Shown: in pieces, positions 1-62,552 of the stretch
Layout: the number at the start of each line of letters is the position of its first letter
Position numbering within the stretch: the first letter of the stretch is position 1
Source of the DNA: Macrostomum lignano
Lineage: Eukaryota
NCBI GenBank assembly: GCA_002269645.1
Contig: NIVC01002554.1
Span: 1 to 64,000 of the forward strand
DNA length: 64,000 bases
Reading direction: 5' to 3'
The notes under the pieces: generated by a model
What the model saw: the letters and a program-made list of their open reading frames with translations, nothing else
Told to the model about the DNA's origin: nothing
Database searches by the model: none
Made by a program: the position numbers and the translations under genes

Positions 1-3000
1 CTTTTCTTTGCCGCTATTCACCAGGTACTGACACACCTGCCTGGCCTCTGCGAAACCTGCGCAATAAAATACTTGCGAGTAATCATGGAACTTAAAAAAC
101 GATGGTTCGGACTACCTTGTAATTTCACAGAACTGAAAAATATACACCTATTTGTAGCAGTTTGCCACTGATCTACAGTTATATCGAAGCTCTTAAATAA
201 ATGTATGGACGCCCCTTATAAGTTTGCTGCATTGCAAAAAAATGCACTTTTCTCTCTTACCTGCAATGCGACCTCGCGCCGAGCCTGGCCAACAAACTCA
301 TCTCCAACAGTTGGTACAGGCCACGTTTTAATCCGCTGGACCTTCCGACCTGGCAGATCCAGGCAGAGTAGATAGTCCGACAGGTCAGGTGACTCGGTTG
401 ACCGTCCGTCAAGCACGTCAGAAAGGCGGGGTGCCTGCAAATTGCCGGGGCCTCGAACCAGAAGGTGCATTCGCGGTCCGTCTATTGCGGCGCTGACCGA
501 AGGCGGTGTGGCCGGTAGCCAAGGCTGGTCACAGCCGTGCATGAAGTAGCCGACAGGGAAGGGGCGACAGCAGGATGCGAGACAATGGCAAGGTGCAAGT
601 CAGGATTCCCTAACAGATCCCTCAGGGTGCGCATTGAGCGACTGCGATCCTTTTCAGGTGGCAACTGCAGCGACTCCGGCACCTCAAAGCTGACGGGCGC
701 CGTCGGTTGGGAAGCCAGGCGCATGACAAAAAGAAGATAGCGCGGAAGCAGTCGCAAAAACAGGCCGTGCTGCTGCAGATCCGGGAAGTTGCACAGCTGG
801 TTGAGCTTAGAGTTCCAGGCCTCCTTAAATCGCGACATTGCGGCTAAAACTTCGGCATCATATCCATCAACTTTGCCGTCCGGAAGAGGCTCGCGGAGCT
901 TGGCATCTCTAGCGCCTGTGCCACCAAGGTCGGTGCAGTACATAACGCCTCCTTGAAGCCGCTTGTCGAAGTAGCCACTCCACAATGCCTGCTCGCGTGG
1001 GTCGAAAACAAAATCTGCTCGCCTCTCCTCTTTCTTTGTCACGAAATTGCTTTCGAATTCGGACAGCTGGCCGGCCAGCTTGTTGAGGTTGAAAACCTTC
1101 AGCTGGACAGTAGACGCGTTGGCGCCGGCCTCTGGCATTGTGTTAATCACTAGATAGTCCGTGCCGTATGGCTGTCCCAGCATGATGTAGTCCGAAACGC
1201 CTCGCAAAGCCAGCAGAAAGCTGCCATCCTTGGCAGACCAGACGTTAAACGTAAAGTAGGCCTTGGCCTTCACCAGCAGCAGCGAGCCATCGTCGCTAAT
1301 GTGCACCGGGCAATTCAGCACCGTGTGAATCTCTGCGTTTGTATCCAGTTCGTAAGACTTGTCCAGCACGCGATGATAAGCGACTGGAACCGTCTGTGGA
1401 AAATTATAATTTTATATGTTTTCAAATTTGTAAATACGCTTCTCAGTTAGCAATTAAACTCACCCGCGCAGCCTCCGGATACCACAAGAATCCAACACAG
1501 TCACCGAGCGGCTCCGACAGCATGACAACAGCAACAGAAGCCGTCCTCGATAGGCTAGTCATGAACGGCTTGTTGACGGCCGCCTCCAACTCCAGCTCGT
1601 GTCGAGCTCGACGCTCAACCTTGGGATCCAGATCAAATAGGTAGAAAGTGAACAGCGCACCTCCTGGACTCAAGGTCACCAAGAAGAGGCACTCTCCATC
1701 GTCAAAGAAACTGGTGTTCTCGCTGGTCAGCTCGTGGGCCGCCAGACCTTGCCCGGAGCAATCTAGTTCGGTTTCTTCGAATGTGTCCAGGTCCACCACC
1801 CTTGGCGTCAGTGGTTCGTCCGAAGTTTCTTCGCCCTCCGAGATGCGGTGGCCTATGTAGAACAGGCACCGATCATTGATGAGGCTTTGCCCCAGCTGCA
1901 TCGGCCAGGAGCGGAACAGGAAGTGGCGAAGCGGCTCCGATTTTAGCAAGCAATACGTGATTGGCATGGTGGCGTAGAAAGTCTTTGCAAAGATCATGTG
2001 CCCCTCGGTGGCTTCCAAGCAGCCGCTGCCCGACTTGGCGAAGTACTGCAGCGGCAGCGAATCAGGCAGGCTAGGCATGAGAACCTTCCAGGCACCGGTG
2101 CGCATGTTTGCCCGCAACAGCTGGAACTGCCCGGGCGCTACCTCCTCGACTGTGCAGAAGCAGCCGCTTGTGGGCAGAACAGCCACGAATCGAATGTGCG
2201 ATGCTGCAGGCCGCTCGGAAATCACAGTCTTTAGCTCGGACCCCTCATGGTCGTACCAAGTGACGGTGTTGTTTTGCAGAGACACTGCGTATATCTTGCC
2301 ATCTTCACACAGGTTGCCAATGGACAGGCGTACCTTCAGAATGAATTAAGTTGACAAGTTACATAGCCAGCGAGGTTTTCCCTCAAATGATATCTACGTG
2401 CGCCTTAAGATAGTGACGGCCTGACTTACCTGCACAGTGCAGTGCGTGTATCCACTACCAGTGTCCAGGCAATTATTAACAGGCAGTAGCAGGGGACTGT
2501 CCTTCTTGCACGCCTCAAGCAGGTCGCTAATGCGTCTGGATCTGCAGCGAATGGCTGCAAGCGGCCGCAGAGGTCCACAGGCAAACTCAGCGGACTGTGG
2601 CTCAGGCTGTACGCTGAGATGCGCAACGCGTTGTAGATCCGAGTGAGGTCGAGCTCATTCTGTTCACTGCCGCGCTCCTTCTTCTTGAGGTCGAAAACAG
2701 ATGCAAGTCCATTAGCAGCTGATGGCGCCGGCTGGAGGCCAACTTGGACTGCAGATGATCCAGGTTAAAGGCAACGTGCTCGAGAAAGTCCACAACTCGG
2801 CCACTCTGATGAAGTGCCTCGGTAGCTGGTTGATGCGGCGCAGGTTGTAGTACGGCTTGTCACTCTCGACTCGAAGAACAAACGGCTGCGCTGGGACCTG
2901 CCTATCTGCGGCCATTGGCACGGGTAGGCCCTGTAGTAAAGAAATAGTTCGTCTTTACTAATTCTGTCTCACTATAAATAAACACAAAAATATTTTTGAG

Positions 3001-6000
3001 AATGTTTCCTACTCTGGTGATACTACGAGTAGTACTTTCGTACGGGGTATTCTAAGTTATTTCTAGTCTAGTTATAGCTAAAATAAAGCTTTTGCATTAC
3101 AAGTGAAACAAAGTTTAACATCGAAAAAGCTGAAAATTAACGAGGATTGACACAGCGCTCACATCTCGCTCCAATTTGGCCTTGACCCTTTCCGGACATT
3201 CAAACGGCTTCTCCCGACCGGCGGCCCACTCTCCAAAAAAGTAGTCGGCCATTCGCGAATGAATAATCCTGTTGTGCTCTGGATCGCTGAGGTAGAGCTT
3301 TTGAGCCACCTCCCAGAATTGTCTGTGGTACCAGAATAGCACAGTGACACCGTCGGCTTCGCGCTCAACCAGGTAGTCGTCGATCTGTTGTCGAATGCGG
3401 GTCCAAGCCAACGGTGGCACGCGAATGAACGGCGGCAAGTGGTGCGTGAACACCTCTCGCAGGACGTCGTCATCTAGCGACAGGAGGTCCTCAATCTCTG
3501 CCTCGCTCAGACCGGTTCGGGATGCTGTCACGTAGGATAGCGCGTTTCGTACAAGCACCTCGCCGTACGAGTGCCAAGTTGGCTAAGCAACAGCCGAATC
3601 GCTCCTTCAACAGTCGGTTCCAGCATGTTTTGTCTAGCGGGGTGTACGAACTCCATCGTCGCGCCTGACGGAACACCAGGCCAATGTAGATAGGCAAAGA
3701 GCAGCTTGCAAATGCCGTTCGAAGCGCGTCCCACTGAGGCTCCGTAAGACGGCGCTTTGACTTTTCCAGCCGCGCCCTGGTGATTTCCTCGCACAATGCT
3801 GGCTCCAGCGGTGGAACATCCATTACTCGGTCCGGTAGCAGCTGAAGAAAATTCTCCCTAATACCGTGCAGAGTTGGCAGGCAGCTTAGTATCATCTTGC
3901 AGCCTGGAGGCAGCTCGGACCTAAGCCAAGTGAGCTGGTAGGCGTAGTCGGAAGCATCAAGTTGATCGAGGGAGTCCAGCACAATGATAACACGGCGCGA
4001 TTTTCCCAGCTGTTGCAGAAAATCGTAAAACGTGCTGACCAGCTCTTGGAAGCTGTCCATTCCTGCAACTTGCTGTGCCTCTGTAGAGCCAAGGAACACT
4101 GCTAACTGCTGACACAATTGCTTCACAGTCTGACGAATGCTGCTTGTGGAGGGACTGGTTCCCAAGAAGCGCAGCAATAGTAGAGCCGACGGCTGGTTAT
4201 CCGGCGGTAGCCAAGAGCGAGCACTCTTGGCAGCCTTGGCCATGATGGAGGTCTTGCCGCAGCCGGAGCTGCCGCACAGCAGCAGCGGCTGCCTGGAGTC
4301 GCCCGTTGTGTAGTCGCGCAGCTGGTCAAGAAACTCCTTCCTGCCCTGAAAGTTGGTCACGTAGCGAACGCAGTGATGCGCGTGCTGCAAAACCTCGGCG
4401 TACAACGGGTCCGCTTGCAGCTCCGACCTGCGCTGTCTGAATGTGTCTACGAGACGCCGGACCTGCGGGTGGGTTTTGGTAGGTTTTCATTGTTTATGGG
4501 ATTAGAATGCCACAAGTTTATATTACTGGATAAGTAGATCAAACCCTCTTCTAACCGTTGAATCGTCAGCATATTTTCTCGGAATCCCCTATGGGAGCTA
4601 TAGAGATCGAGATAGAGATAGAGAAATAGAGATCGGTAGAGAAATTTGATTCAGCAACTAATCAAAGCCAAGTGTTTTACAGTCAGTACGATTTTGACTC
4701 ATAACCATACACAAGCAAGGAATCGACTCATACCTGCATCTCAAAGTCCTTAACTACGCTGTCCAGGTAATCAGCATGAACCTCGGGGCTGATACCTTTT
4801 GGAGGCTGCCATGTCAAAGAGTATTCCGTGACGCCTTTAGGCAGCAGGTCCCGCAGTCGCGATCGCAGTCCGTCCAACGCCTCGCTGCCTCGGGATCGGC
4901 GAATCTTTGCGCCGCTTTGTCGCCCTCGTCGAGACGCTGCTGAATGTCAGTTATGTCGCGGAAGATGGCAAAGGCAAATGGCTTCAGCTCAGGATGGGCG
5001 TCCAGCACGCCAATTTGAATCTCTTGATGCGTAATTGACGTACAGAACCGGATAGCCCCGGCCGACGTCATTGAGCCTTTTGCAACCGCCGCATTTGCAG
5101 CGACCTCCAGCGCCTTCTGCAGCGCGGGGCCATCGCGCGCCCACTCGGTCTGTTCGGCCTCGGACTCCAGTGGGCGCAGATTGTACACAGGCGGCCGGCC
5201 GTTCTCATCGCGCAGTACCATCGATGCAGCAGGGCCAAGTCGTCCGGCCGGTCGGACATGGCAGCCTCGAGTATGCCGGCCTCCTCCTCGGTGAGCCGGT
5301 TGGGCGCCTCTTTGCCGCCGTAGCGATGGCTCAGGATTGTCTATGGGGATCCCGGGGGTGTATTTTGCATCTGTTGCGCTAGTGCTAGCGCTAATCTAGA
5401 CCATAGCTATTCCTTAAATTGGTCGCTCGGCCATTAGAGGGCAAAAAATCGAAAATAAAAACTGTTGCGTTCGCAGTTAGGGAAATCATGAAATATCTGA
5501 GTGGACGGCAGGTACGAGCTATTAGACGTTTAAATTCGAACTCAACTTCGAGTACAAAGGCTGCATGGTTCGCACTTAGGAATTTCAGATGTATTGATAC
5601 AACCTCGAAAATATGGAGCTATGCTAATCCTCACCATAAAATGCGGCCCACTAGAGAGGCGCTGACAGTTGAGAATCTCGTTGAAGCACATCTCCGAGGC
5701 CTTGTGATCGGAGGACGCCGCGTCCTGGATGCCCCAGCGCATGTCCACGATCTGAAAGAATCCGTGGTCAAATTATTCTGCTTTGACTGTTTCAATAGGG
5801 AAAAAATAAATTCTTATGATTTCAATTACGCTTTTACCTGGAATTCTAGGCCATACTGATCACGGTAGAACTCCTTCATCTTGGAGTAAACAGTCTTCAT
5901 CAGCGCGTTCCGTTCAACCGCCATGTCTGAAGAAAAGTTAAGAATGCGCTTTGGTCTTGGGTGCTCAACAGCTTCTGAATTCTGCCTGTGTAGATACATG

Positions 6001-16837: not shown

Positions 16838-19800
16838 ATGACTGAGAAAGTGCGTATTCGTCAGGCAGTTAACAGAGGCGATATCGAGGCCGTTAGGGAT
16901 CACCTGCAGACGCTTCCGTCGTACCGCCACAAAGACGAATTTTGTCATGACAGCGCGCGAACAGCAGCGCATAGTCGGCAGTGGGAAATGGTGCAGTTTC
17001 TTGCGCAGAGCATTAATGACGGGAGAAAGAGAGATACGTGCTGCTTTGAGACAGCTCAAACTGCTACAATGTGCAAGCAGTGGCCTTGGCTGAATGTTTT
17101 CGTGCAGGCAATTTCTAACCGAGAGACAAGAGATCTCTGCTGCCAGAAGATCGCACCGGATGCCGCACGCAATGAGCAGTGGGATTTAGTGAGATTTCTA
17201 GTCCAGGAAGCTGCCAATCCAACTGTGAAGGATCAGCTAAGAGCTGCTGGATCGGAATCGGCTTCGAAATTCGCCCAGTGGGATGTAAGACGAGAAATCG
17301 CCAACCAGGATATTCGAGACGAATGTTGCAGCAAGGTGTTGAGAACCGCTGCAGCCAAGCATCAGTGGGATTTTGTAAGACTTGTTGCACAGTTATTTCA
17401 ATGCGAACAGAAGCGAGACCGAAGCTGCGTGGAAACAGCAAAATCTGCTGCAAAAGACGGTCAGCAGGAACTCGTTCGATTTCTGGTGCAACAAATCAAA
17501 GACCCGAGTTTGAGGGACAGGTGCTGCATGGAGGCATCGGAAGCTGCTTCAAATGCGAGACGTTGGCTATTAGTGAGACTTCTTGTTGAACTCTTCGTTG
17601 ACAGTGGCATGAGAGATCGGATCTGTGTGCATGCCGCTAAGGCCGCTTTGAAATTTGGCCAGTTGGAGGAACTGATGTTTTTCGTTGAGACAGTTGCTGA
17701 TCAAAGTTTAAAGGATCAATTCTGCATCGAGGCGGCGAAATCTGCTGCCAAAGAGCGCCTTTGGCGAGCGGTCGAATTTTTTGGTGATGACAGTGGTCGA
17801 TCAGCGTTCAAGAGACCAGTGCTGCAAGGATGCCGTGAAATCAGCTGCGAGTGAGTGCAAATGGGAACTTGTGAGGTCGCTCGTGGGTGCTATTTCCGAT
17901 CCGAATATAAGCGATCAGTGCTGCATAGAGGCAGCCAAGTGTTCCGCAAGTGTTGGAAAACAGGAGATCGTTGAATTCCTATTTAACGCTCTAAAAAATC
18001 CCGATTCGCAAATCGCCTTCCGCCGAGAATGCGCCGTGGCGGCTTGCTGTCGTTTGCGCGAAGAATTTGTGGCTTTTCTCGGCGTTGAGCCCGACTGGCT
18101 CTTCGAATTTAGCCACGTCCTCAGCTTCACGGCTTCGATGGCCATCGAGGGCCGAAATTCCGTTCTGAAGTCGACTCTGTCGAAGATGAATCCCGATCGA
18201 ATCACCCAGCTGCTCTGTCTCTCAATCTCACACTGCCATGTCTCACTGGCTCTAACGCTTATGGACGACGAGAGATTCAGCAAAGAGCATGTTGATGTGC
18301 CCGACAGCTCAGGAGCAACTGCGCTCATGCTAGCGGCTGATTCTGGTCACCACGAGCTCATAGATAAGCTGTTGGATCTGGGAGCGTCAGTGGGAGCTCA
18401 AGATCATCAGGGTAGAACGGCATTGACGCGAGCCTGCGAGGCGGGTCACATTAGAACTGCAAAGCTTCTGAAAGACAGGGGAGCGAATGCGGACCATCGA
18501 GACGGCCAAGGCCTGACGTGTACGCAGCTGGCAGAGAGGCTTGGACACTCGCAGCTGCTGCGGCTGCTGTGTCCCAAGAAAGTAAGGTCAGCCCATGCAC
18601 AAATATTTTCTAAGTTCGTTGCGCTCAACAGAAGTTTTATCATTCAAACTTAGAATTGACAGAAAATTTGCAAACCTTTCAGCAGTCCGCCCATCAAGAA
18701 GCCGGTCGCTCTTTCCAGAAAACCTTCAAGTTCTTTGCCTACGTAAGTTTTTTCCGCAAGCAGCTTTTCCATGTCTTTTACTTGCCGTCGGCATAGATGT
18801 CTACGAGCGTAGAACTTCGATAGCCTCAATGGCTATAGGCGTATAGATTTAAATGATTGCCTAATATATAAAAAAGAACTTTTTCCCCATTCCAGATTCA
18901 AAGACGATGTTCAGCAGGACGAGCAGCTCAGCGAAGAGCTGCATCAACTGCTCAGCAAAGCTGGCTTCACATCTGAGAGAGCGGAGTGCCAGCAGAGAAT
19001 GGCCTGCCTGCTGGAAGGAGTCGCCAAAATTCTGACTGAATATTCCCGAAAGATGACTGGCAGCTACGCGGAGGGTTGGGCTAACAGTCTGATGCAAGTC
19101 AACGGCAGGACAGCGGCTGACTCGGACATTGACTGGACTGTGCTTGTTCGCGGACAAACGTTTCATCTTGAAGGCGGATGCGGAAAATTTCGCGAATGCA
19201 ATAATGTCGAAAAACTGAAGGTTGCAGAGGGTCACGCACAGGTGACAGTAGGATCTGGTAAGAGGAACAGGGTAATGTGTAACTTTTTAGTTTTCGTGTC
19301 AAAAAGTATTGCTCCGGCCCACTTGATTCGCAGTTGAACTTTCGCATTAGTCGCAAGTTTACCCTATCTTATTCAATCCATAGGCAGCCAGCCTGCTGTG
19401 ACAGTTGGTGCATTCGGGGTGCGGCCTGCACTGGACACGTGCCACGCCATTGAGTGCTGCAGCTCGTTCTGCGAGGACAGAATTGAAAAATTAATTAAAA
19501 ACTACGGCTGGGTTCACCTCGTCAGGGCTACTCGACCGAGCTCAACCAACGAGCTCAGGGTAAGTTTCAGCTTCCAAGAGAGGGAGATCATGCGACAACT
19601 GAACACAATTCAGGGACAGCTGTTCACAATTATCAAGTTCATCTTCAAAAGGCACCTGCCGCTTAATCTCAGCACGCCCGGGCTCAAGAGCTATCACGCG
19701 AAAACCCTGCTATTTTTCATGCTGGAAAAGCACGGCATGGAGAATGAAGAAGCTTGGAAACCTCAGAAACTAATCTCGCTGATCAAGGAGTCACTCAGCA

Positions 19801-20783
19801 TGCTGCTGAGCTTCATCGATAAGAGCAATTCAGCCGATGTGTGCATGCCGCATTTCTTCATGCCCGGCGCTCCGCTCTACTTCAAAAATGCTGGAATCGG
19901 TGGCGACTTTGACAACACGAAGGCGAGAATTCGAAGCCGACTCAGCGAACTTAGGGGCGACATTAGCGGAGTGCTTAAGCAGCTTAAGGTGCTAGTGAGA
20001 CCTCTGGAATCGGAGAATTTCTACTTTCACCCCTTCACGCTGTTGCCTCTGACGGCTTCGCCGGCCGAAATCGAGATAAGAAGCGGAATGGCCTTGCAGG
20101 AGCAGCATTCAAGGCTTGCGCGAGTGTACCAGGTGCTTCACCAGTGCTTGGACGAGCTGCAGTCGGAATCGAGCGACAGGGACACTCTGACTGGGCAGCT
20201 CGGTCAGCTGGACCAGCTTCCGTCTTGCAAATACGCCGCCTTGTGCCTGGCCGCCATTGTCAGCTTGCGGTTTGGAGAGACAGCCGAGTCGGAGAGAATC
20301 TTGATGGAGCTTCAAAAGCGAAGAGTCAAAAGCGGACTTAGCCCGAGAGAGGTTCAGACGTTGGACACAGACTGGGCTTGGCGGTTCTGCCTCCCGTGTC
20401 ACAATCCGCCCCATTTCTCGTTCCTGCCCGGCTTCACGCAGTCTCTGTTCACAGCCAGACTGTCGCAGCCGAGCTCCTCTCACCTGTACGTGAACTTCCG
20501 CTGCCTGAGCTGGAGCCTCCAAGCCGAGCTGCTCCATGATCGCAGCCCAATAGTGTTCGGTGAGTGGCTGGAAGATCTGCAAGAAGACCCGGACTTGGAG
20601 GAGCTGCTCACCCTAGCCCACTACAGCGACTGCCGTGAGCATGCGACGTTCTGCCTAGAGCAAATGGAGATTATCAGAGACGAGAGACGCGTCGCCATGG
20701 ATAACCAGGACCACGAGAAGATTCGCTGCGTGACTGAGAAGCTTCAGCGGCTAAGCAAGTCTCCGCAGGCACGACGCTCTTAA
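16838..20783 (+). CDS. Ankyrin/helical-repeat - Mab-21 (cGAS-like receptor, cGLR) fusion protein, ~1160 aa, 3 exons, one +1 frameshift
   Basis: Exon 1 (16838-18581) has an extra T in the T6 run at 17777-17782; removing it gives EFLVMTVVDQ. It encodes eleven 33-aa repeats and 3 canonical ankyrins (GATALMLAADSGH, GRTALTRACEAGH, GLTCTQLAERLGH). Exon 2 (~18915-19257) has TGSYAEG...DSDIDW, the nucleotidyltransferase GS and DxD motifs. Intron 19258-19383 is GT-AG and phase 1. Exon 3 (19384-20783) has the Mab-21 motifs GWVHLV, ELRVSFSFQEREIM, LKSYHAKTLLFFMLEK and MPHFFMPG. The exon 1-2 junction is inferred (donor AAA|GTAAGG at 18582; phase-0 acceptors at 18914 or 18917). Confidence 0.8.
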
Positions 20784-25006: not shown

Positions 25007-28000
25007 ATGCGGCTGTACACACTTAGCAAGCGCAGCTTTGTATTGGTCTTCCTAGTCTTCTTTGCCTGCTTTGGCCTGGCAGTGTTTGTTGGCCTGCTGG
25101 GACCGCCAATCATCCAGCAGTCGGTGCAGAATGCCAGCAGCTTGAAGCCAGCGCCAACTCCATCTGTCATGCGGCGGGGTCCATTCAATCTGCTAAGCCC
25201 GCCGCTTAACCTGCTGCACCAGCAGCTCTGGCTGGTGGCCAAGTTCTTTGTTGATGAGTCGCAGTGTGAGTTGGTCGCAGTCTGATAATTATTGATTCAA
25301 TAATTTTATAGCATGTAACATAACAGCAGGTGTGGGGGTAACTGACTCGGCAATAAAACTCGCACACACAGACGACCGCAAGCTGGAGTACGGCCTGACC
25401 GTCAGCGTCAACTTGACAAGAGGCCGCGGCGCCAGGTGCGGCAGCTTCTTCAGCGGGCCGCACAGCCGGATGAGGCGGCTGCGGTGCGACCGCAGGGTGA
25501 GGAGTGGAGGCTGGGCTATGTGCTGTAGTTTATGCTGTAGGTGTGCTGTAGTTTATGCTGTAGTTTATGCTGTAGGTGTGGTGTAGAAAACTAAGCGATA
25601 GGCCTAGGACTGCAGCAATATTTCCCATATCTCCCGCGCAGGCCTGCTCCCAGATGACCCTGTTCCACCTGAGCTACATCAACTGCAGCCGATACTCGGT
25701 GCAGGTGGGCTTCTCAGGCCTGGAGAATGTGTCCGGCGAGATGCTGTCGGTGCGCGATGTGCAGTTCGGCTTTGTCACCTACAGTCCGGCCTTCACGCAG
25801 GCGGAGATCTGGCTGAGATTCCTCCTGCTGCTCGCCTCCTTCGTGGCCGTGGTGAGTTCAGTCTCACATCTGTTCTCTCATCCACCATCTGTCCTCTCAC
25901 CCCTCCGTCTCTTCTCTCACCCCACCATCTCTTCTCTCACCCTCCATCTGTTCTCTCACCCCACCATCTGTTCTCTCCCCCTCCGTCTCTTCTCTCACCC
26001 CACCATCTCTTCTCTCACCCCACCATCTCTTCTCTCCCCCCTCCATCTGTTCTCTCACCCCACTATCTCTTCTCTCACCCCAACATCTCTTCTCTCACCC
26101 CACCATCTCTTCTCTCTCCCCTCCATCTGTTCTCTCACCCCACCATCTCTTCTCTCACCCCAACATCTCTTCTCTCACCCCACCATTTCTTCTCTCACCC
26201 ACCATCTGTTCTCTCACCCCACCATCTCTTCTCTCACCTCACCATCTCTTCTCTCACCCCTCCATCTGTTCTCTCACCCCATCATCTCTTCTCTCACCCC
26301 ACCATCTCTTCTCTCACCCCACCATCTCTTCTCTCCCCCCTCCATCTGTTCTCTCACCCCACCATCTCTTCTCTCACCCCACCATCTCTTCTCTCACCCC
26401 ACCATCTCTTCTCTCACCCCACCATCTGTTCTCTCACCCCACCATCTGTTCTCCCACCCCACCATCTGTTCTCTCACCCCACCATCTGTTCTCTCACCCC
26501 ACCATCTCCTCTCACCCCACCATCTGTTCTCTCACCCCTCTACCTCTTCTTTCACCCCGCCATCTCTTCTCTCACCTCTTCATCTCTTCTCTCACCTCTC
26601 CATCTCTTCTCTCACCCCACCATCTCTTCTCTCACCCCAACATCTCTTCTCTCACCCCACCATCTCTTCTCTCCCCCCTCCATCTGTTCTCTCACCCCAC
26701 CATCTCTTCTCTCACCCCACCATCTCTTCTCTCACCCCACCATCTCTTCTCTTACCCCACCATCTGTTCTCTCACCCCACCATCTGTTCTCTCACCCCAC
26801 CATCTGTTCTCTCACCCCACCATCTCTTCTCTCACCCCACCATCTGTTCTCTCACCCCACCATCTCCTCTCTCACCCCACCATCTGTTCTCTCACCCCTC
26901 TACCTCTTCTTTCACCCCGCCATCTCTTCTCTCACCTCTTCATCTCTTCTCTCACCTCTCCATCTCTTCTCTCACCCCACCATCTCTTCTCTCACCCCAA
27001 CATCTCTTCTCTCACCCCACCATCTCTTCTCTCCCCCCTCCATCTGTTCTCTCACCCCACCATCTCTTCTCTCACCCCACCATCTCTTCTCTCACCCCAC
27101 CATCTCTTCTCTTACCCCACCATCTGTTCTCTCACCCCACCATCTGTTCTCTCACCCCACCATCTGTTCTCTCACCCCACCATCTCTTCTCTCACCCCAC
27201 CATCTGTTCTCTCACCCCACCATCTCTTCTCTCACCCCACCATCTCTTCTCTTACCCCACCATCTGTTCTCTCACCCCACCATCTGTTCTCTCACCCCAC
27301 CATCTGTTCTCTCACCCCACCATCTCTTCTCTCACCCCACCATCTGTTCTCTCACCCCACCATCTCTTCTCTTACCCCATCATCTGTTCTCTCACCCCAC
27401 CATCTGTTCTCTCATCCCACCATCTCTTCTCTTACCCCACCATCTGTTCTCTCACCCCACCATCTGTTCTCTCACCCCACCATCTGTTCTCTCACCCCTC
27501 TACCTCTTCTTTCACCCCGCCATCTCTTCTCTCACCTCTTCATCTCTTCTCTCACCTCTCCATCTCTTTTCTCACCCTTCCATCTCTTCTCTCACCCACT
27601 ATCTATCTCACCCCTGTCTTCCACCTCCCCTCTATCTTATCTTTCATCCCAACAAGCAAAAGCTCCCGCCCCCGCACCGCCACCAGTGCCTGTTCATGCA
27701 CTCGCTGAGGAGATTTCTGTTGCGCGACTGGAGCATCGAGCAGCGCTGGATGGCCCTCCTGCTGCCGCTGCTGCTGCTGTACAACGGTAAGCCGCCTTTA
27801 TTTTTTAAAGCCTTATTGCCTACTATAAGTAGCCTAGGCTGAATTGCTTGCGGTATTGCAGATCCGCTGCTGCCGCTAACGTTTTTGGTGAATCACTGGC
27901 TGCCGAGCATGCTGGACACCGTGTTCCAGGCCACCTTCCTGTGCACCCTGCTCATGTTCTGGCTGTGCATCTATCACAGCGTGCGCGAGGTGAGGGCGCT

Positions 28001-40609: not shown

Positions 40610-55763
<15,154 letters not shown>

Positions 55764-59540: not shown

Positions 59541-60791
<1,251 letters not shown>

Positions 60792-61274: not shown

Positions 61275-61667
61275 TATCTGATATTACAACAATATGAGCT
61301 CAATTTTACAAATTGAGAGGGCAACTACTATAGGACGGCTAACGTATTTAGTAAGTTTAGCCCTCTAAGTCCTAAGTAGCAACCAGTTCAAGCAGATTAA
61401 TACAGAACTATCGCCGACATGCACACCTGCTATTCACGCCGAGTTCCTACAGCGCACGCTATATCTACAACCTGTACTGAGCTGAGCAGACTTAACCTCT
61501 AGCATAGTTGGGTCAAAACTGATACGGCGGGTTGAGTACACGCTTGTAGAGGCGCACGCAGCGCTCATTCGATCTTAAATATGCGTGCGTAAAGGTTAGA
61601 AGCCAACTCTGCACTGTGACTGGAATCTGCAGCCGCTGATCTAAACTTTTAGCTGCAGTTGGCAAAA

Positions 61668-62552
61668 ATGTCGCTTAACTGGAAAGACTGGATTACGCCC
61701 AGATATTCCGCCGATGCCATCGTGCAGAAGGTGGCCGAAGAATTTGAATACTTTGACGATGACATTGTGGTGTCCACCTACCATAAGTCTGGGACGACAC
61801 TAACGCAGGAGATGATCTCCTGTCTGATTCTGGGGCCGGAGAAGACTAAGAACACGGCACTCCTGCGCAGGTCGCCCTTCATCGATTTCTACAAGCACCT
61901 GCCCAGAGACCCCATGGAAGAGGCGCGAACGCTTCCCAGGCCGCGGGTGCTCAAAACCCACCTGCCGCCGGCCTTCCACATGCGTCATTTGAGCGACCGT
62001 TCTCCCGACGTGGGACCTAAGAACGTCATTGTCATTCGCAACCCCAAAGACGTTGTTGTGTCGGCCTTTCACCACTTCACCGGGACGAAACTGTTCGACG
62101 GCAAGCCGATTCCGGACAAGTTTTCCGAGTACTGGCGCAGCGCCATCTTCCAGCCGGGGAACGTCTCGCACCACGACATTTTCGACTTCAACCGGTCCTG
62201 GTGGTCGTTTAAGGACCACCCGAGGGTCTTCGTGCTGTTCTACGAAGACATCGTGCGGAACAAAGCAGATCAAGTCCGAAAACTGGCCAAGTTTTTGGGA
62301 GTCGAGCTCACCGACGAGCTGCTCGAGGCCACCCTGGACCTCACCAGTTTCCAGACTATGCGGGAGAACCCTAACGTGAACTACTCCATTGCCGAGAGGG
62401 CCAAGGATGATTGGAAGCCGGGCAGCAACTTCATTCGCAAGGGCGAGATCGGCGACTGGAAGAATCACTTTACAGTAGCCGAGAACGAGGAGTTCGACCG
62501 GTACATCGCGGAGCGGATGCGCGGCTGCGACTTGAAGTTCACGTTTGAATGA
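61668..62552 (+). CDS. Cytosolic sulfotransferase (SULT family), intronless, 294 aa
   Basis: PAPS-binding 5'-PSB loop STYHKSGTT; PRVLKTHLP; 3'-PB motif IRNPKDVVVSAFHH; LFYEDI; C-terminal FIRKGEIGDWKNHFT. Confidence 0.95.
   Translation: MSLNWKDWITPRYSADAIVQKVAEEFEYFDDDIVVSTYHKSGTTLTQEMISCLILGPEKTKNTALLRRSPFIDFYKHLPRDPMEEARTLPRPRVLKTHLPPAFHMRHLSDRSPDVGPKNVIVIRNPKDVVVSAFHHFTGTKLFDGKPIPDKFSEYWRSAIFQPGNVSHHDIFDFNRSWWSFKDHPRVFVLFYEDIVRNKADQVRKLAKFLGVELTDELLEATLDLTSFQTMRENPNVNYSIAERAKDDWKPGSNFIRKGEIGDWKNHFTVAENEEFDRYIAERMRGCDLKFTFE

What the first reader, a model, noticed from the sequence alone, without database searches (positions are those of the whole stretch)
16838..20783. Receptor-like cGLR: a long ankyrin/helical repeat array fused to a cGAS-like nucleotidyltransferase
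Seen in sequence: about 580 aa of repeats (11 atypical 33-mers plus 3 true ankyrins), then a Mab-21 domain with intact GS (19059) and DxD (DSDID, 19119-19133) motifs, a candidate third Asp (ALD, 19434), and a further helical C-terminal extension. Established: Mab-21/cGAS-like receptors make cyclic dinucleotides for STING-type signalling, and canonical cGAS senses nucleic acid through its own core. Inference: here a large repeat solenoid may act as a protein or pathogen sensor, or an autoinhibitory lid, coupled to a second-messenger synthase. That is NLR-like receptor logic with a cGAS output. The join between repeats and enzyme depends on one inferred splice junction and one homopolymer correction.
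Basis: partly seen in the sequence, partly recalled or inferred. Interest (0 to 1): 0.85.

Follow-up and report, generated by a model that had tools for sequence, protein, structure and literature searches.

The report
Ankyrin-repeat cGAS-like receptor gene, flatworm
This is a real flatworm (Macrostomum-type) gene that joins a long ankyrin-like repeat array to a cGAS-like nucleotidyltransferase with an intact catalytic motif, but this architecture and close Macrostomum relatives were already catalogued in 2023, so it is a new member of a known kind.

Summary
On the + strand, 16838-20783 encodes about 1,170-1,190 aa. It has eleven degenerate 33-residue ankyrin-like repeats, a helical linker and three canonical ankyrin repeats. 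These are followed by a Mab-21/cGAS-like nucleotidyltransferase (MTGS, 20 residues, DIDW, 56 residues, LDT) and a roughly 280-aa helical extension.

The predicted folds match cGAS, MB21D2 and Cv-cGLR1 for the enzyme half, and ankyrin-B, ankyrin-1 and DARPins for the repeat half.

I corrected the gene model to four exons: 16838-18586, 18683-18742, 18896-19257 and 19384-20783. Intron positions and phases match those of a Macrostomum lignano paralogue. The extra T at 17777-17782 is the only lesion: it is either an assembly error or a very recent pseudogenisation.

Every strong relative whose source I looked up is M. lignano, which has a large lineage-specific expansion (89 clusters at E<=1e-30). 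Li et al. 2023 already list ankyrin-fused cGLRs and screened five M. lignano members, two of them close paralogues. None appears in that paper's main text or among its 15 characterised actives. Ligand, product and receptor remain unknown, and STING could not be checked.

Side finding: some M. lignano paralogues carry a C-terminal caspase domain.

The parts
16838..18586 (+). Exon 1: start codon, eleven degenerate 33-aa ankyrin-like repeats, helical linker and three canonical ankyrin repeats. Contains a 1-nt frameshift.
   Evidence: ORFs and translation. The N-terminus aligns with M. lignano P0021 and P0036. The exon end is in phase 2, as in P0036.
16925..18014 (+). Array of eleven atypical 33-residue repeats, aa 30-392, consensus about RDxCCxxAAxxAAxxxxWxLVxFLVxxIxDxxx. 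Cys-Cys replaces the TPLH of canonical ankyrin repeats.
   Evidence: 33-aa register. The AF2 model has pLDDT 86.7 and shows a 17-residue plus a 9-10-residue helix per repeat. Foldseek matches AnkB 24-repeat, ankyrin-1 and DARPins at E 1e-9 to 1e-10. Only 32-43% identical to paralogues, against 70-78% for the enzyme.
17777..17782 (+). T6 homopolymer carrying one base too many. As assembled, the frame stops at 17852-17854 after 338 aa.
   Evidence: Frame analysis. Deleting one T restores 'AVEF-LVMTVVDQRSRDQCC' in perfect repeat register. A -1 ribosomal slip would not reach the right frame (inference from the codon positions).
18015..18311 (+). Helical linker of degenerate repeats, aa 393-491, conserved in paralogues ('EPDWLFEFS...AMAIEGRNSVL').
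   Evidence: 58-68% identity to paralogues. Helical and pLDDT above 88 in the AF2 model.
18312..18581 (+). Three canonical ankyrin repeats, aa 492-581.
   Evidence: Pfam Ank_2 E 8e-24, Ank E 4e-20.
18587..18682 (+). Intron 1 (96 nt, GTCAGC...TTTCAG).
   Evidence: Splice sites and phase 2 match the M. lignano P0036 locus L001.
18683..18742 (+). Probable 60-nt mini-exon encoding a linker ((S)SPPIKKPVALSRKPSSSLP(T)). Skipping it also keeps the frame.
   Evidence: P0036 has a 54-nt mini-exon at the same place, in the same phase and also starting 'SP'. Translations with and without it are open.
18743..18895 (+). Intron 2 (153 nt, GTAAGT...CCATTCCAG).
Evidence: Strong donor and polypyrimidine acceptor.
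18896..19257 (+). Exon 3: N-terminal helix of the NTase plus GS and DxD (first half of the catalytic core).
   Evidence: Alignment with paralogues. G49/S50 = 19059-19064, D71 = 19125-19127, D73 = 19131-19133.
19258..19383 (+). Intron 3 (126 nt, GTAAGA...CCATAG, phase 1).
   Evidence: Same position and phase as in P0036.
19384..20783 (+). Exon 4: third catalytic Asp (19434-19436), Mab-21_C helix bundle (19656-19874), roughly 280-aa helical C-terminal extension (19938-20780) and stop codon TAA (20781-20783).
   Evidence: Pfam PF20266 at 31 bits. Profile against the PDB: cGLR1 8gjy E 8e-8, cGAS about 3e-6. AF2 pLDDT 79, pTM 0.82. The extension is conserved in all full-length paralogues, with invariant DWAWRF and YVNF.

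Best explanation
The locus is one four-exon gene of a Macrostomum-type flatworm. It encodes a 1,169-1,189-aa cGAS-like receptor of the ankyrin-fused class and belongs to a large lineage-specific expansion.

Shown:
- A continuous ankyrin-type alpha-solenoid: eleven fast-evolving Cys-rich 33-mers, a linker and three canonical ANK repeats.
- This is joined in frame to a Mab-21/cGLR nucleotidyltransferase with the complete GS...DxD...D motif, followed by a family-specific helical extension.

Inferred mechanism: the enzyme makes a nucleotide second messenger only when activated. The variable solenoid, perhaps together with the C-terminal extension, supplies ligand or partner recognition, or holds the enzyme inactive. 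This would replace the basic nucleic-acid-binding surface that cGAS uses. The product, the ligand and the downstream receptor are unknown.

The single extra T at 17777-17782 is most likely an assembly error or a very young lesion in an otherwise intact gene.
For: Gene and fusion:
- With one T removed, the open frames join through GT-AG introns with no stop over 3,570 nt.
- Intron positions and phases equal those of M. lignano P0036.
- 26 of the 30 best homologues have Ank plus the cGLR part in one model. P0036 (1,217 aa) has the same full architecture.

Enzyme:
- MTGS-X20-DIDW-X56-LDT fits the published cGLR motif.
- G49, S50, D71, D73 and D132 are invariant in 13 diverse members.
- Pfam Mab-21_C scores above its cut-off.
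- The family profile hits cGLR1 at 8e-8 and cGAS at about 3e-6, ahead of MAB21L1 at 6.5e-4.
- Foldseek's top hits are cGAS (E 2e-5, target TM 0.52-0.55), MB21D2 and Cv-cGLR1.

Solenoid:
- AF2 pLDDT is 86.7, with matches to long ankyrin arrays.
- It is the most divergent part (32-43% identity against 70-78%), and repeat number varies among paralogues.

Published precedent: ANK-fused cGLRs are described, and M. lignano PAA68676.1 (= P0009) and PAA93208.1 were chosen for screening.
Against: - As assembled, the gene is frameshifted and would stop after 338 aa.
- There is no expression evidence.
- The NTase core is not recognised by sequence: PF03281 is not hit, and a core-only profile finds nothing in the PDB.
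- The 20-residue GS-to-DxD spacer is at the upper limit of the motif and is modelled with low confidence. pLDDT is below 50 at residues 58-69 and 112-132, so the geometry of the triad is not established.
- Five M. lignano relatives were screened in vitro. None is mentioned in the main text or among the 15 characterised actives.
- STING and cGAS are reported absent from the planarian S. mediterranea, and STING in Macrostomum was not checked.
- The pI of the enzyme part is 8.35 and of the whole protein 6.67. This neither supports nor excludes nucleic-acid binding.
Confidence: 0.6

Rival explanations
1. Recently dead copy. The extra T is real, and this locus is a young pseudogene in a gene family that turns over quickly by birth and death.
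For: The frameshift stops the frame after 338 aa. The family is very large (89 clusters at E<=1e-30) and contains many truncated or partial models. At least one paralogue has lost the catalytic dyad (P0028, DSNVN).
Against: It is the only lesion in 3.5 kb. All three introns keep GT-AG and their phase, all catalytic residues are intact, and the downstream 850 or more codons remain open and conserved. The lesion sits in a homopolymer, the typical site of long-read assembly errors (general knowledge).
Confidence: 0.2
2. Non-enzymatic Mab-21 scaffold. The NTase fold serves as an adaptor or nucleotide-binding regulator, as in MiD51 or MAB21L1, and no second messenger is made.
For: MiD51 and MAB21L1 are also structural or sequence matches. 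None of the five screened M. lignano relatives appears in the main text or among the 15 characterised actives. The sequence of the NTase core is atypical.
Against: The full GS/DxD/D set is invariant across members as little as 30-38% identical, which is hard to explain without catalysis. cGAS and cGLRs outrank MiD51 and MAB21L1 in both the fold and the profile searches. The published screen used constructs without the repeats and only nucleic-acid ligands.
Confidence: 0.12
3. Two genes. The ankyrin protein and the Mab-21 protein are separate transcripts, for example through an internal promoter or spliced-leader trans-splicing onto the 18896 acceptor.
For: The join depends on predicted splicing. 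One M. lignano model (P0007) starts just upstream of the NTase and has no ankyrin repeats. Spliced-leader trans-splicing is known in Macrostomum (my own knowledge, not checked here).
Against: Exon 1 has no stop before its donor. Junction phases are conserved with M. lignano. 26 of 30 homologous models are fused. In paralogue locus L002 a cGLR and ankyrin repeats share one uninterrupted 680-codon ORF, so such fusions exist without splicing.
Confidence: 0.05

Closest known systems
Ankyrin-fused cGLRs of Macrostomum lignano listed by Li et al. 2023 (PMC9980059): PAA68676.1 (= P0009) and PAA93208.1, screen numbers 93 and 92
   Same: Same family and same architecture. 66-70% identity over the enzyme and extension. 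Same motifs, same C-terminal extension, and the same three ANK repeats plus 33-mers.
   Different: The window protein is not in the searched protein collection (best identity 70%), so it is a further paralogue or an orthologue in another Macrostomum species. It has eleven 33-mers against three or four in PAA68676.1. It carries a frameshift in this assembly.
Human cGAS, MB21D2 and oyster Cv-cGLR1 (solved structures 4k9b, 7lt1, 8gjw)
   Same: Mab-21 NTase fold with a C-terminal helix bundle and the GS...[DE]x[DE]...[DE] catalytic motif. These are the best structural matches.
   Different: Only 12-17% identity. The GS-to-DxD spacer is 20 residues. The core carries an insertion with invariant His and Cys residues. 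The protein also has a 580-aa N-terminal solenoid and a 280-aa C-terminal extension. No ligand or product is known.
[quoted passage not shown] 2023)
   Same: The same design principle: a cGLR core joined to a protein-interaction module.
   Different: A different phylum, and probably an independent fusion. The coral also has seven STING genes, whereas the STING status of Macrostomum is unknown.
NLR/STAND receptors (repeat sensor plus signalling module)
   Same: A variable repeat array next to a conserved signalling domain, and a lineage-specific expansion.
   Different: This gene has no NACHT or NB-ARC ATPase. The resemblance is one of logic only.

Membership tests
cGAS-like receptors (cGLR; criteria of Li et al. 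2023) | Active-site motif h[QT]GS X8-20 [DE]h[DE]h X50-90 h[DE]h | tested here: met
   M-T-G-S, 20 residues, D-I-D-W, 56 residues, L-D-T. G49, S50, D71, D73 and D132 are invariant in 13 family members. The spacer is at the upper limit. The residue after the third Asp is T here, and L, F or I in more distant paralogues.
cGAS-like receptors (cGLR) | Sequence homology of the C-terminal helix bundle | tested here: met
   Pfam Mab-21_C scores 31 bits against a cut-off of 24.1, and all 9 members scanned match. The family profile against PDB sequences gives cGLR1 8gjy E 8e-8 and cGAS about 3e-6.
cGAS-like receptors (cGLR) | Sequence homology of the N-terminal NTase core | tested here: inconclusive
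   PF03281 is not hit at E<=1. A core-only profile finds no PDB relative. hhalign against one beetle cGLR sequence gave nothing. Only the motif and the predicted fold link the core to cGLRs. UniProt names some M. lignano relatives 'Mab-21 domain-containing'.
cGAS-like receptors (cGLR) | Predicted structural homology to known cGLR or CD-NTase enzymes | tested here: met
   AF2 model with pLDDT 79 and pTM 0.82. Foldseek finds cGAS at E 2e-5 with target TM 0.52-0.55 over 358-397 columns, then MB21D2, Cv-cGLR1 and MiD51. The active-site loops have low confidence.
cGAS-like receptors (cGLR) | Ligand-dependent synthesis of a nucleotide second messenger | not testable with these tools
   This needs biochemistry. 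Published constructs of five relatives were screened, and none is mentioned in the main text or among the 15 characterised actives.
cGAS-STING pathway | A STING (PF15009) receptor in the same genome | not tested
   No STING gene turned up among the window ORFs I scanned. The genome is not available here. A planarian is reported to lack cGAS and STING. I found no paper on STING in Macrostomum.
Ankyrin repeat proteins | 33-residue helix-turn-helix repeats forming a stacked solenoid | tested here: met
   Three repeats match Pfam Ank and Ank_2. The eleven 33-mers do not match Pfam in this protein. The whole 581-aa model nevertheless aligns with AnkB, ankyrin-1 and DARPins at E about 1e-10. CDD calls Ank_2 over the 33-mers of PAA68676.1 in Li et al. 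Table S2.
NLR/STAND receptors | Central NACHT or NB-ARC ATPase | tested here: not met
   No P-loop NTPase domain in this protein. A separate NACHT gene lies about 11 kb upstream on the other strand.
2'-5'-oligoadenylate synthetases (OAS) | OAS1_C domain and OAS-type core | tested here: not met
   No OAS family appears in the Pfam scans, and no OAS structure is among the Foldseek or profile hits. The only resemblance is the 'GSxxxG...SDxD' wording of the motif.

The most novel reading that the evidence does not exclude
This Macrostomum family may be a STING-independent receptor system. In this reading the hypervariable Cys-rich ankyrin-like solenoid recognises pathogen or danger ligands directly. 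The cGLR domain would then signal to caspase-type effectors rather than to STING. The suggestion comes from M. lignano paralogues in which the same cGLR domain and extension is fused to ANK repeats and a Peptidase_C14 caspase domain. It would be an animal counterpart of NLR or inflammasome logic built on a nucleotidyltransferase.
Probability: 0.15. Interest if true: 0.75.

Novelty: new member of a known kind. Interest (0 to 1): 0.4.

Why it matters
Li et al. 2023 report that most flatworms have no cGLR other than Mab21-like proteins, and a planarian is reported to lack both cGAS and STING. Macrostomum instead has a very large expansion of repeat-fused cGLRs whose ligand, product and receptor are all unknown.

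The window adds one more, nearly intact, full-length member with a long repeat array and a checked exon structure. That is useful for annotation and for choosing constructs. Full-length protein with the solenoid may be what earlier screens of repeat-less constructs lacked.

It does not change what is known about the class. The caspase-fused paralogues are the more promising lead for finding the pathway's output.

Tried and rejected
1. It is in frame, but I rejected it in favour of 18586 to (18683-18742) to 18896. Homologues extend upstream of 18915, and the phase-2 junctions and a mini-exon are conserved in M. lignano P0036.
2. Programmed -1 frameshifting on the U-run. Rejected, because the required shift is +1/-2 (frame arithmetic).
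3. hhalign of the family profile against a beetle cGLR sequence copied from Li et al. Table S3. No meaningful alignment.
4. A core-only family profile against PDB sequences, meant to map the catalytic residues residue by residue. No hit.
5. PF03281 was not detected even at E<=1.
6. Literature searches for STING or Mab-21 in Macrostomum and for cGLR-caspase fusions. Nothing relevant.
7. A second copy of the gene, or a caspase domain, in the window. None.
8. I ran no further search on STING. A distant flatworm STING would not rank among the candidates returned for a vertebrate query.
9. Whether the neighbouring NACHT gene also carries assembly-type indels. Left unresolved, because the frame change near 3500-3580 is not in a homopolymer.
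Full report
**What is in the sequence.** The window is eukaryotic, with short GT-AG introns and many satellite arrays. On the + strand four open stretches line up: 16838-17854, 17781-18653, about 18896-19257 and 19384-20783.

The first two overlap and differ by one base. The switch must lie between the last stop of the second frame (17709) and the stop of the first frame (17852). The only homopolymer there is T6 at 17777-17782. Removing one T gives '...AAKERLWRAVEF-LVMTVVDQRSRDQCC...', which keeps the 33-residue repeat register exactly. As assembled, the protein would end after 338 aa. A -1 ribosomal slip would not reach the correct frame, because the required shift is +1.

**Gene model.** That join is in frame, but paralogues carry conserved sequence upstream of it: 'LSDDSKQDMRLSKWLH' in P0036 against window 'FKDDVQQDEQLSEELH'. 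This places the acceptor at 18895|18896, behind a good polypyrimidine tract.

I fetched the genomic locus of the full-length M. lignano paralogue P0036 (PAA62074.1, 1,217 aa; L001). Its annotated structure is a large repeat exon, a 54-nt mini-exon, an NTase exon and a last exon, with junction phases 2, 2, 1.

The window has the same layout and phases:
- exon 1, 16838-18586 (donor AG|GTCAGC)
- a 60-nt candidate mini-exon, 18683-18742 (TTTCAG|...|GTAAGT), which begins 'SP' like the M. lignano one
- exon 3, 18896-19257
- a phase-1 intron, 19258-19383, at the same codon as in P0036
- exon 4, 19384-20783, ending in TAA

With one T removed this gives 1,189 aa without a stop, or 1,169 aa if the mini-exon is skipped, which is also in frame.

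**The repeat half.** Residues 30-392 are eleven units in a 33-aa register (one about 3 aa short), with consensus roughly RDxCCxxAAxxAAxxxxWxLVxFLVxxIxDxxx. Residues 393-491 are a conserved helical linker, and 492-581 are three canonical ankyrin repeats.

Pfam recognises only the last three (Ank_2 E 8e-24). An AlphaFold model of the 581 residues (pLDDT 86.7) is entirely helical, with a 17-residue and a 9-10-residue helix per 33-mer. It aligns over 500-800 columns with the 24-repeat ankyrin-B domain, ankyrin-1 and DARPins at E about 1e-10. So the 33-mers are degenerate ankyrin repeats in which Cys-Cys replaces TPLH and the hairpin loop is shortened.

This array is the least conserved part of the protein. 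It is 32-43% identical to paralogues, against 58-78% for the linker, ANK3, NTase and Mab-21_C. Repeat number also differs widely among paralogues.

**The enzyme half.**
- Pfam finds Mab-21_C (PF20266, 31 bits, cut-off 24.1) but not the NTase-core model PF03281.
- A profile of nine family members hits the PDB sequences of a cGAS-like receptor 1 (8gjy, E 8e-8) and cGAS (about 3e-6) ahead of MAB21L1 (6.5e-4).
- The AlphaFold model of the C-terminal 580 aa has pLDDT 79 and pTM 0.82, but is weak at residues 58-69 and 112-132.
- Its best Foldseek matches are cGAS (E 2e-5, target TM 0.52-0.55), MB21D2, oyster Cv-cGLR1 and then MiD51. The last 280 residues give only weak TPR-like matches.

Li et al. 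2023 define the cGLR active site as h[QT]GS X8-20 [DE]h[DE]h X50-90 h[DE]h. The window protein reads MTGS-X20-DIDW-X56-LDT.

I aligned 13 diverse family members, including three more distant M. lignano proteins taken from that paper's Table S3. G49, S50, D71, D73 and D132 are invariant while D69 is not. More distant members read 'DLVPAF' there, the classical wording. One paralogue (P0028) has DSNVN and has presumably lost activity.

The enzyme part has pI 8.35 and the whole protein 6.67. This is not informative about nucleic-acid binding.

**Relatives and origin.**
- A word-indexed search returned 35 proteins, 34 named as Macrostomum lignano and one unnamed JGI record. The best identity was 70%, and 26 of the first 30 combine Ank families with the cGLR part.
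- An exhaustive profile search found 1,338 representatives at E<=1e-3 and 89 at E<=1e-30.
- All 18 strong representatives (E<=1e-59) I looked up were M. lignano. Weaker hits include a bivalve.

The window protein itself is not in the collection. The source is therefore a Macrostomum-type flatworm, probably not the annotated M. lignano gene set. I did not settle the species.

**What is already known.** Li et al. 2023 state that 87% of cGLRs are single-domain but that some carry TPR or ankyrin modules. They also state that 'most platyhelminthes' have no cGLR other than Mab21-like proteins.

Their screen (Table S3) includes five M. lignano proteins. Two are close paralogues of the window protein: PAA93208.1 and PAA68676.1, the latter identical to my P0009. 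The constructs start after the ankyrin repeats. Their domain table lists Ank_2 in PAA68676.1. Macrostomum is not mentioned in the main text, and the 15 characterised actives are described without it. So the architecture and this very subfamily are catalogued, while activity, ligand and product remain unreported.

A 2026 planarian study found neither cGAS nor STING in Schmidtea. I found nothing on STING in Macrostomum and could not search its genome.

**Interpretation.**
- Shown: one gene, an ankyrin-type solenoid fused to a cGLR with a complete and conserved catalytic motif, and membership of a lineage-specific expansion.
- Inferred: the enzyme is active and regulated, and the variable solenoid and/or the conserved extension provides recognition or autoinhibition.
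- Main rival: this copy is a young pseudogene. The frameshift is the only lesion in 3.5 kb and sits in a homopolymer, so I rate an assembly error or a very recent event as more likely.
- Second rival: a catalytically silent scaffold such as MiD51. This is made less likely by the invariance of all five catalytic positions at 30-38% overall identity.
- Third rival: separate transcripts. This is unlikely given the conserved junction phases and the many fused models, but only cDNA can exclude it.

**Side finding.** Three M. lignano models continue after the family's cGLR domain and extension into canonical ankyrin repeats and a caspase domain (PF00656, E about 1e-25 to 1e-27). They are P0041 (PAA59752.1), P0190 (PAA80948.1) and P0043 (PAA93319.1, 2,111 aa, with about 25 N-terminal 33-mers).

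In locus L002 a single 680-codon ORF runs from the last NTase exon through the extension into the downstream ankyrin repeats, so that join does not depend on splicing. The window gene stops right after the extension, and the window holds no caspase. I found no paper describing cGLR-caspase fusions. This hints at a caspase-type output for the family and is the most interesting lead that came out of the work.

**Verdict.** The finding is real and correctly read at the level of architecture, with a corrected exon structure. It is a new member of a known kind. Interest is moderate, because the biology of this flatworm expansion is unexplored, but the window adds no new principle.

Noticed in passing
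M. lignano loci L002 (3388-6648) and L003 (3001-11307); proteins P0041, P0190, P0043: Paralogues of this cGLR family continue into canonical ankyrin repeats and a Peptidase_C14 caspase domain. In L002 the cGLR, the extension and the ankyrin repeats share one uninterrupted 680-codon ORF. No such fusion was found in the literature searched.
   Followed up: partly
window about 485-5300, minus strand: A STAND/NACHT ATPase gene with an NWD1-like winged-helix domain (AAA_16 E 1e-11, NACHT 2e-8, HTH_NWD1 3e-9), split over three frames. The frame change near 3500-3580 is not in a homopolymer, so it may be an intron or a real lesion. This is a second innate-immunity-type gene about 11 kb from the cGLR.
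   Followed up: partly
window 25867-58801: About 33 kb made up almost wholly of unrelated tandem arrays with strong strand skew. They include a 46-bp unit in 248 copies at 99% identity (41917-53342), a 20-bp unit in 87 copies (25867-27597), a 35-bp unit in 48 copies, and several tetranucleotide arrays.
   Followed up: no
window 59712-60791 (+) and 61659-62552 (+): An actin ORF (Pfam Actin E 5e-131, lacking its N-terminal 40 or so residues, so probably one exon) and a cytosolic sulfotransferase ORF (E 7e-56).
   Followed up: no
window 19164-19235 and 19458-19460 (H84, C89, C95, H107, C140 of the enzyme part): His and Cys residues that are invariant or nearly so in 13 family members lie in the insertion between the DxD strand and the third Asp. 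They may form a metal site, at a different position from the zinc thumb of vertebrate cGAS. This is speculative, and the model confidence there is only 67-74.
   Followed up: no
window 16925-18014: Nearly every 33-mer carries a Cys-Cys (or Cys plus one other residue) where canonical ankyrin repeats have TPLH. The repeat region is 5.1% Cys.
   Followed up: no
protein P0028 (M. lignano PAA, 845 aa): A family member in which the catalytic D-x-D is N-x-N (DSNVN) and the region around the third Asp is rearranged. It is probably a catalytically dead paralogue.
   Followed up: no
protein P0023 (JGI record, 3,238-bp contig): A 467-aa fragment of this flatworm cGLR family (48% identity) sits in a JGI contig without an organism name. 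It may be flatworm DNA in an environmental sample.
   Followed up: no
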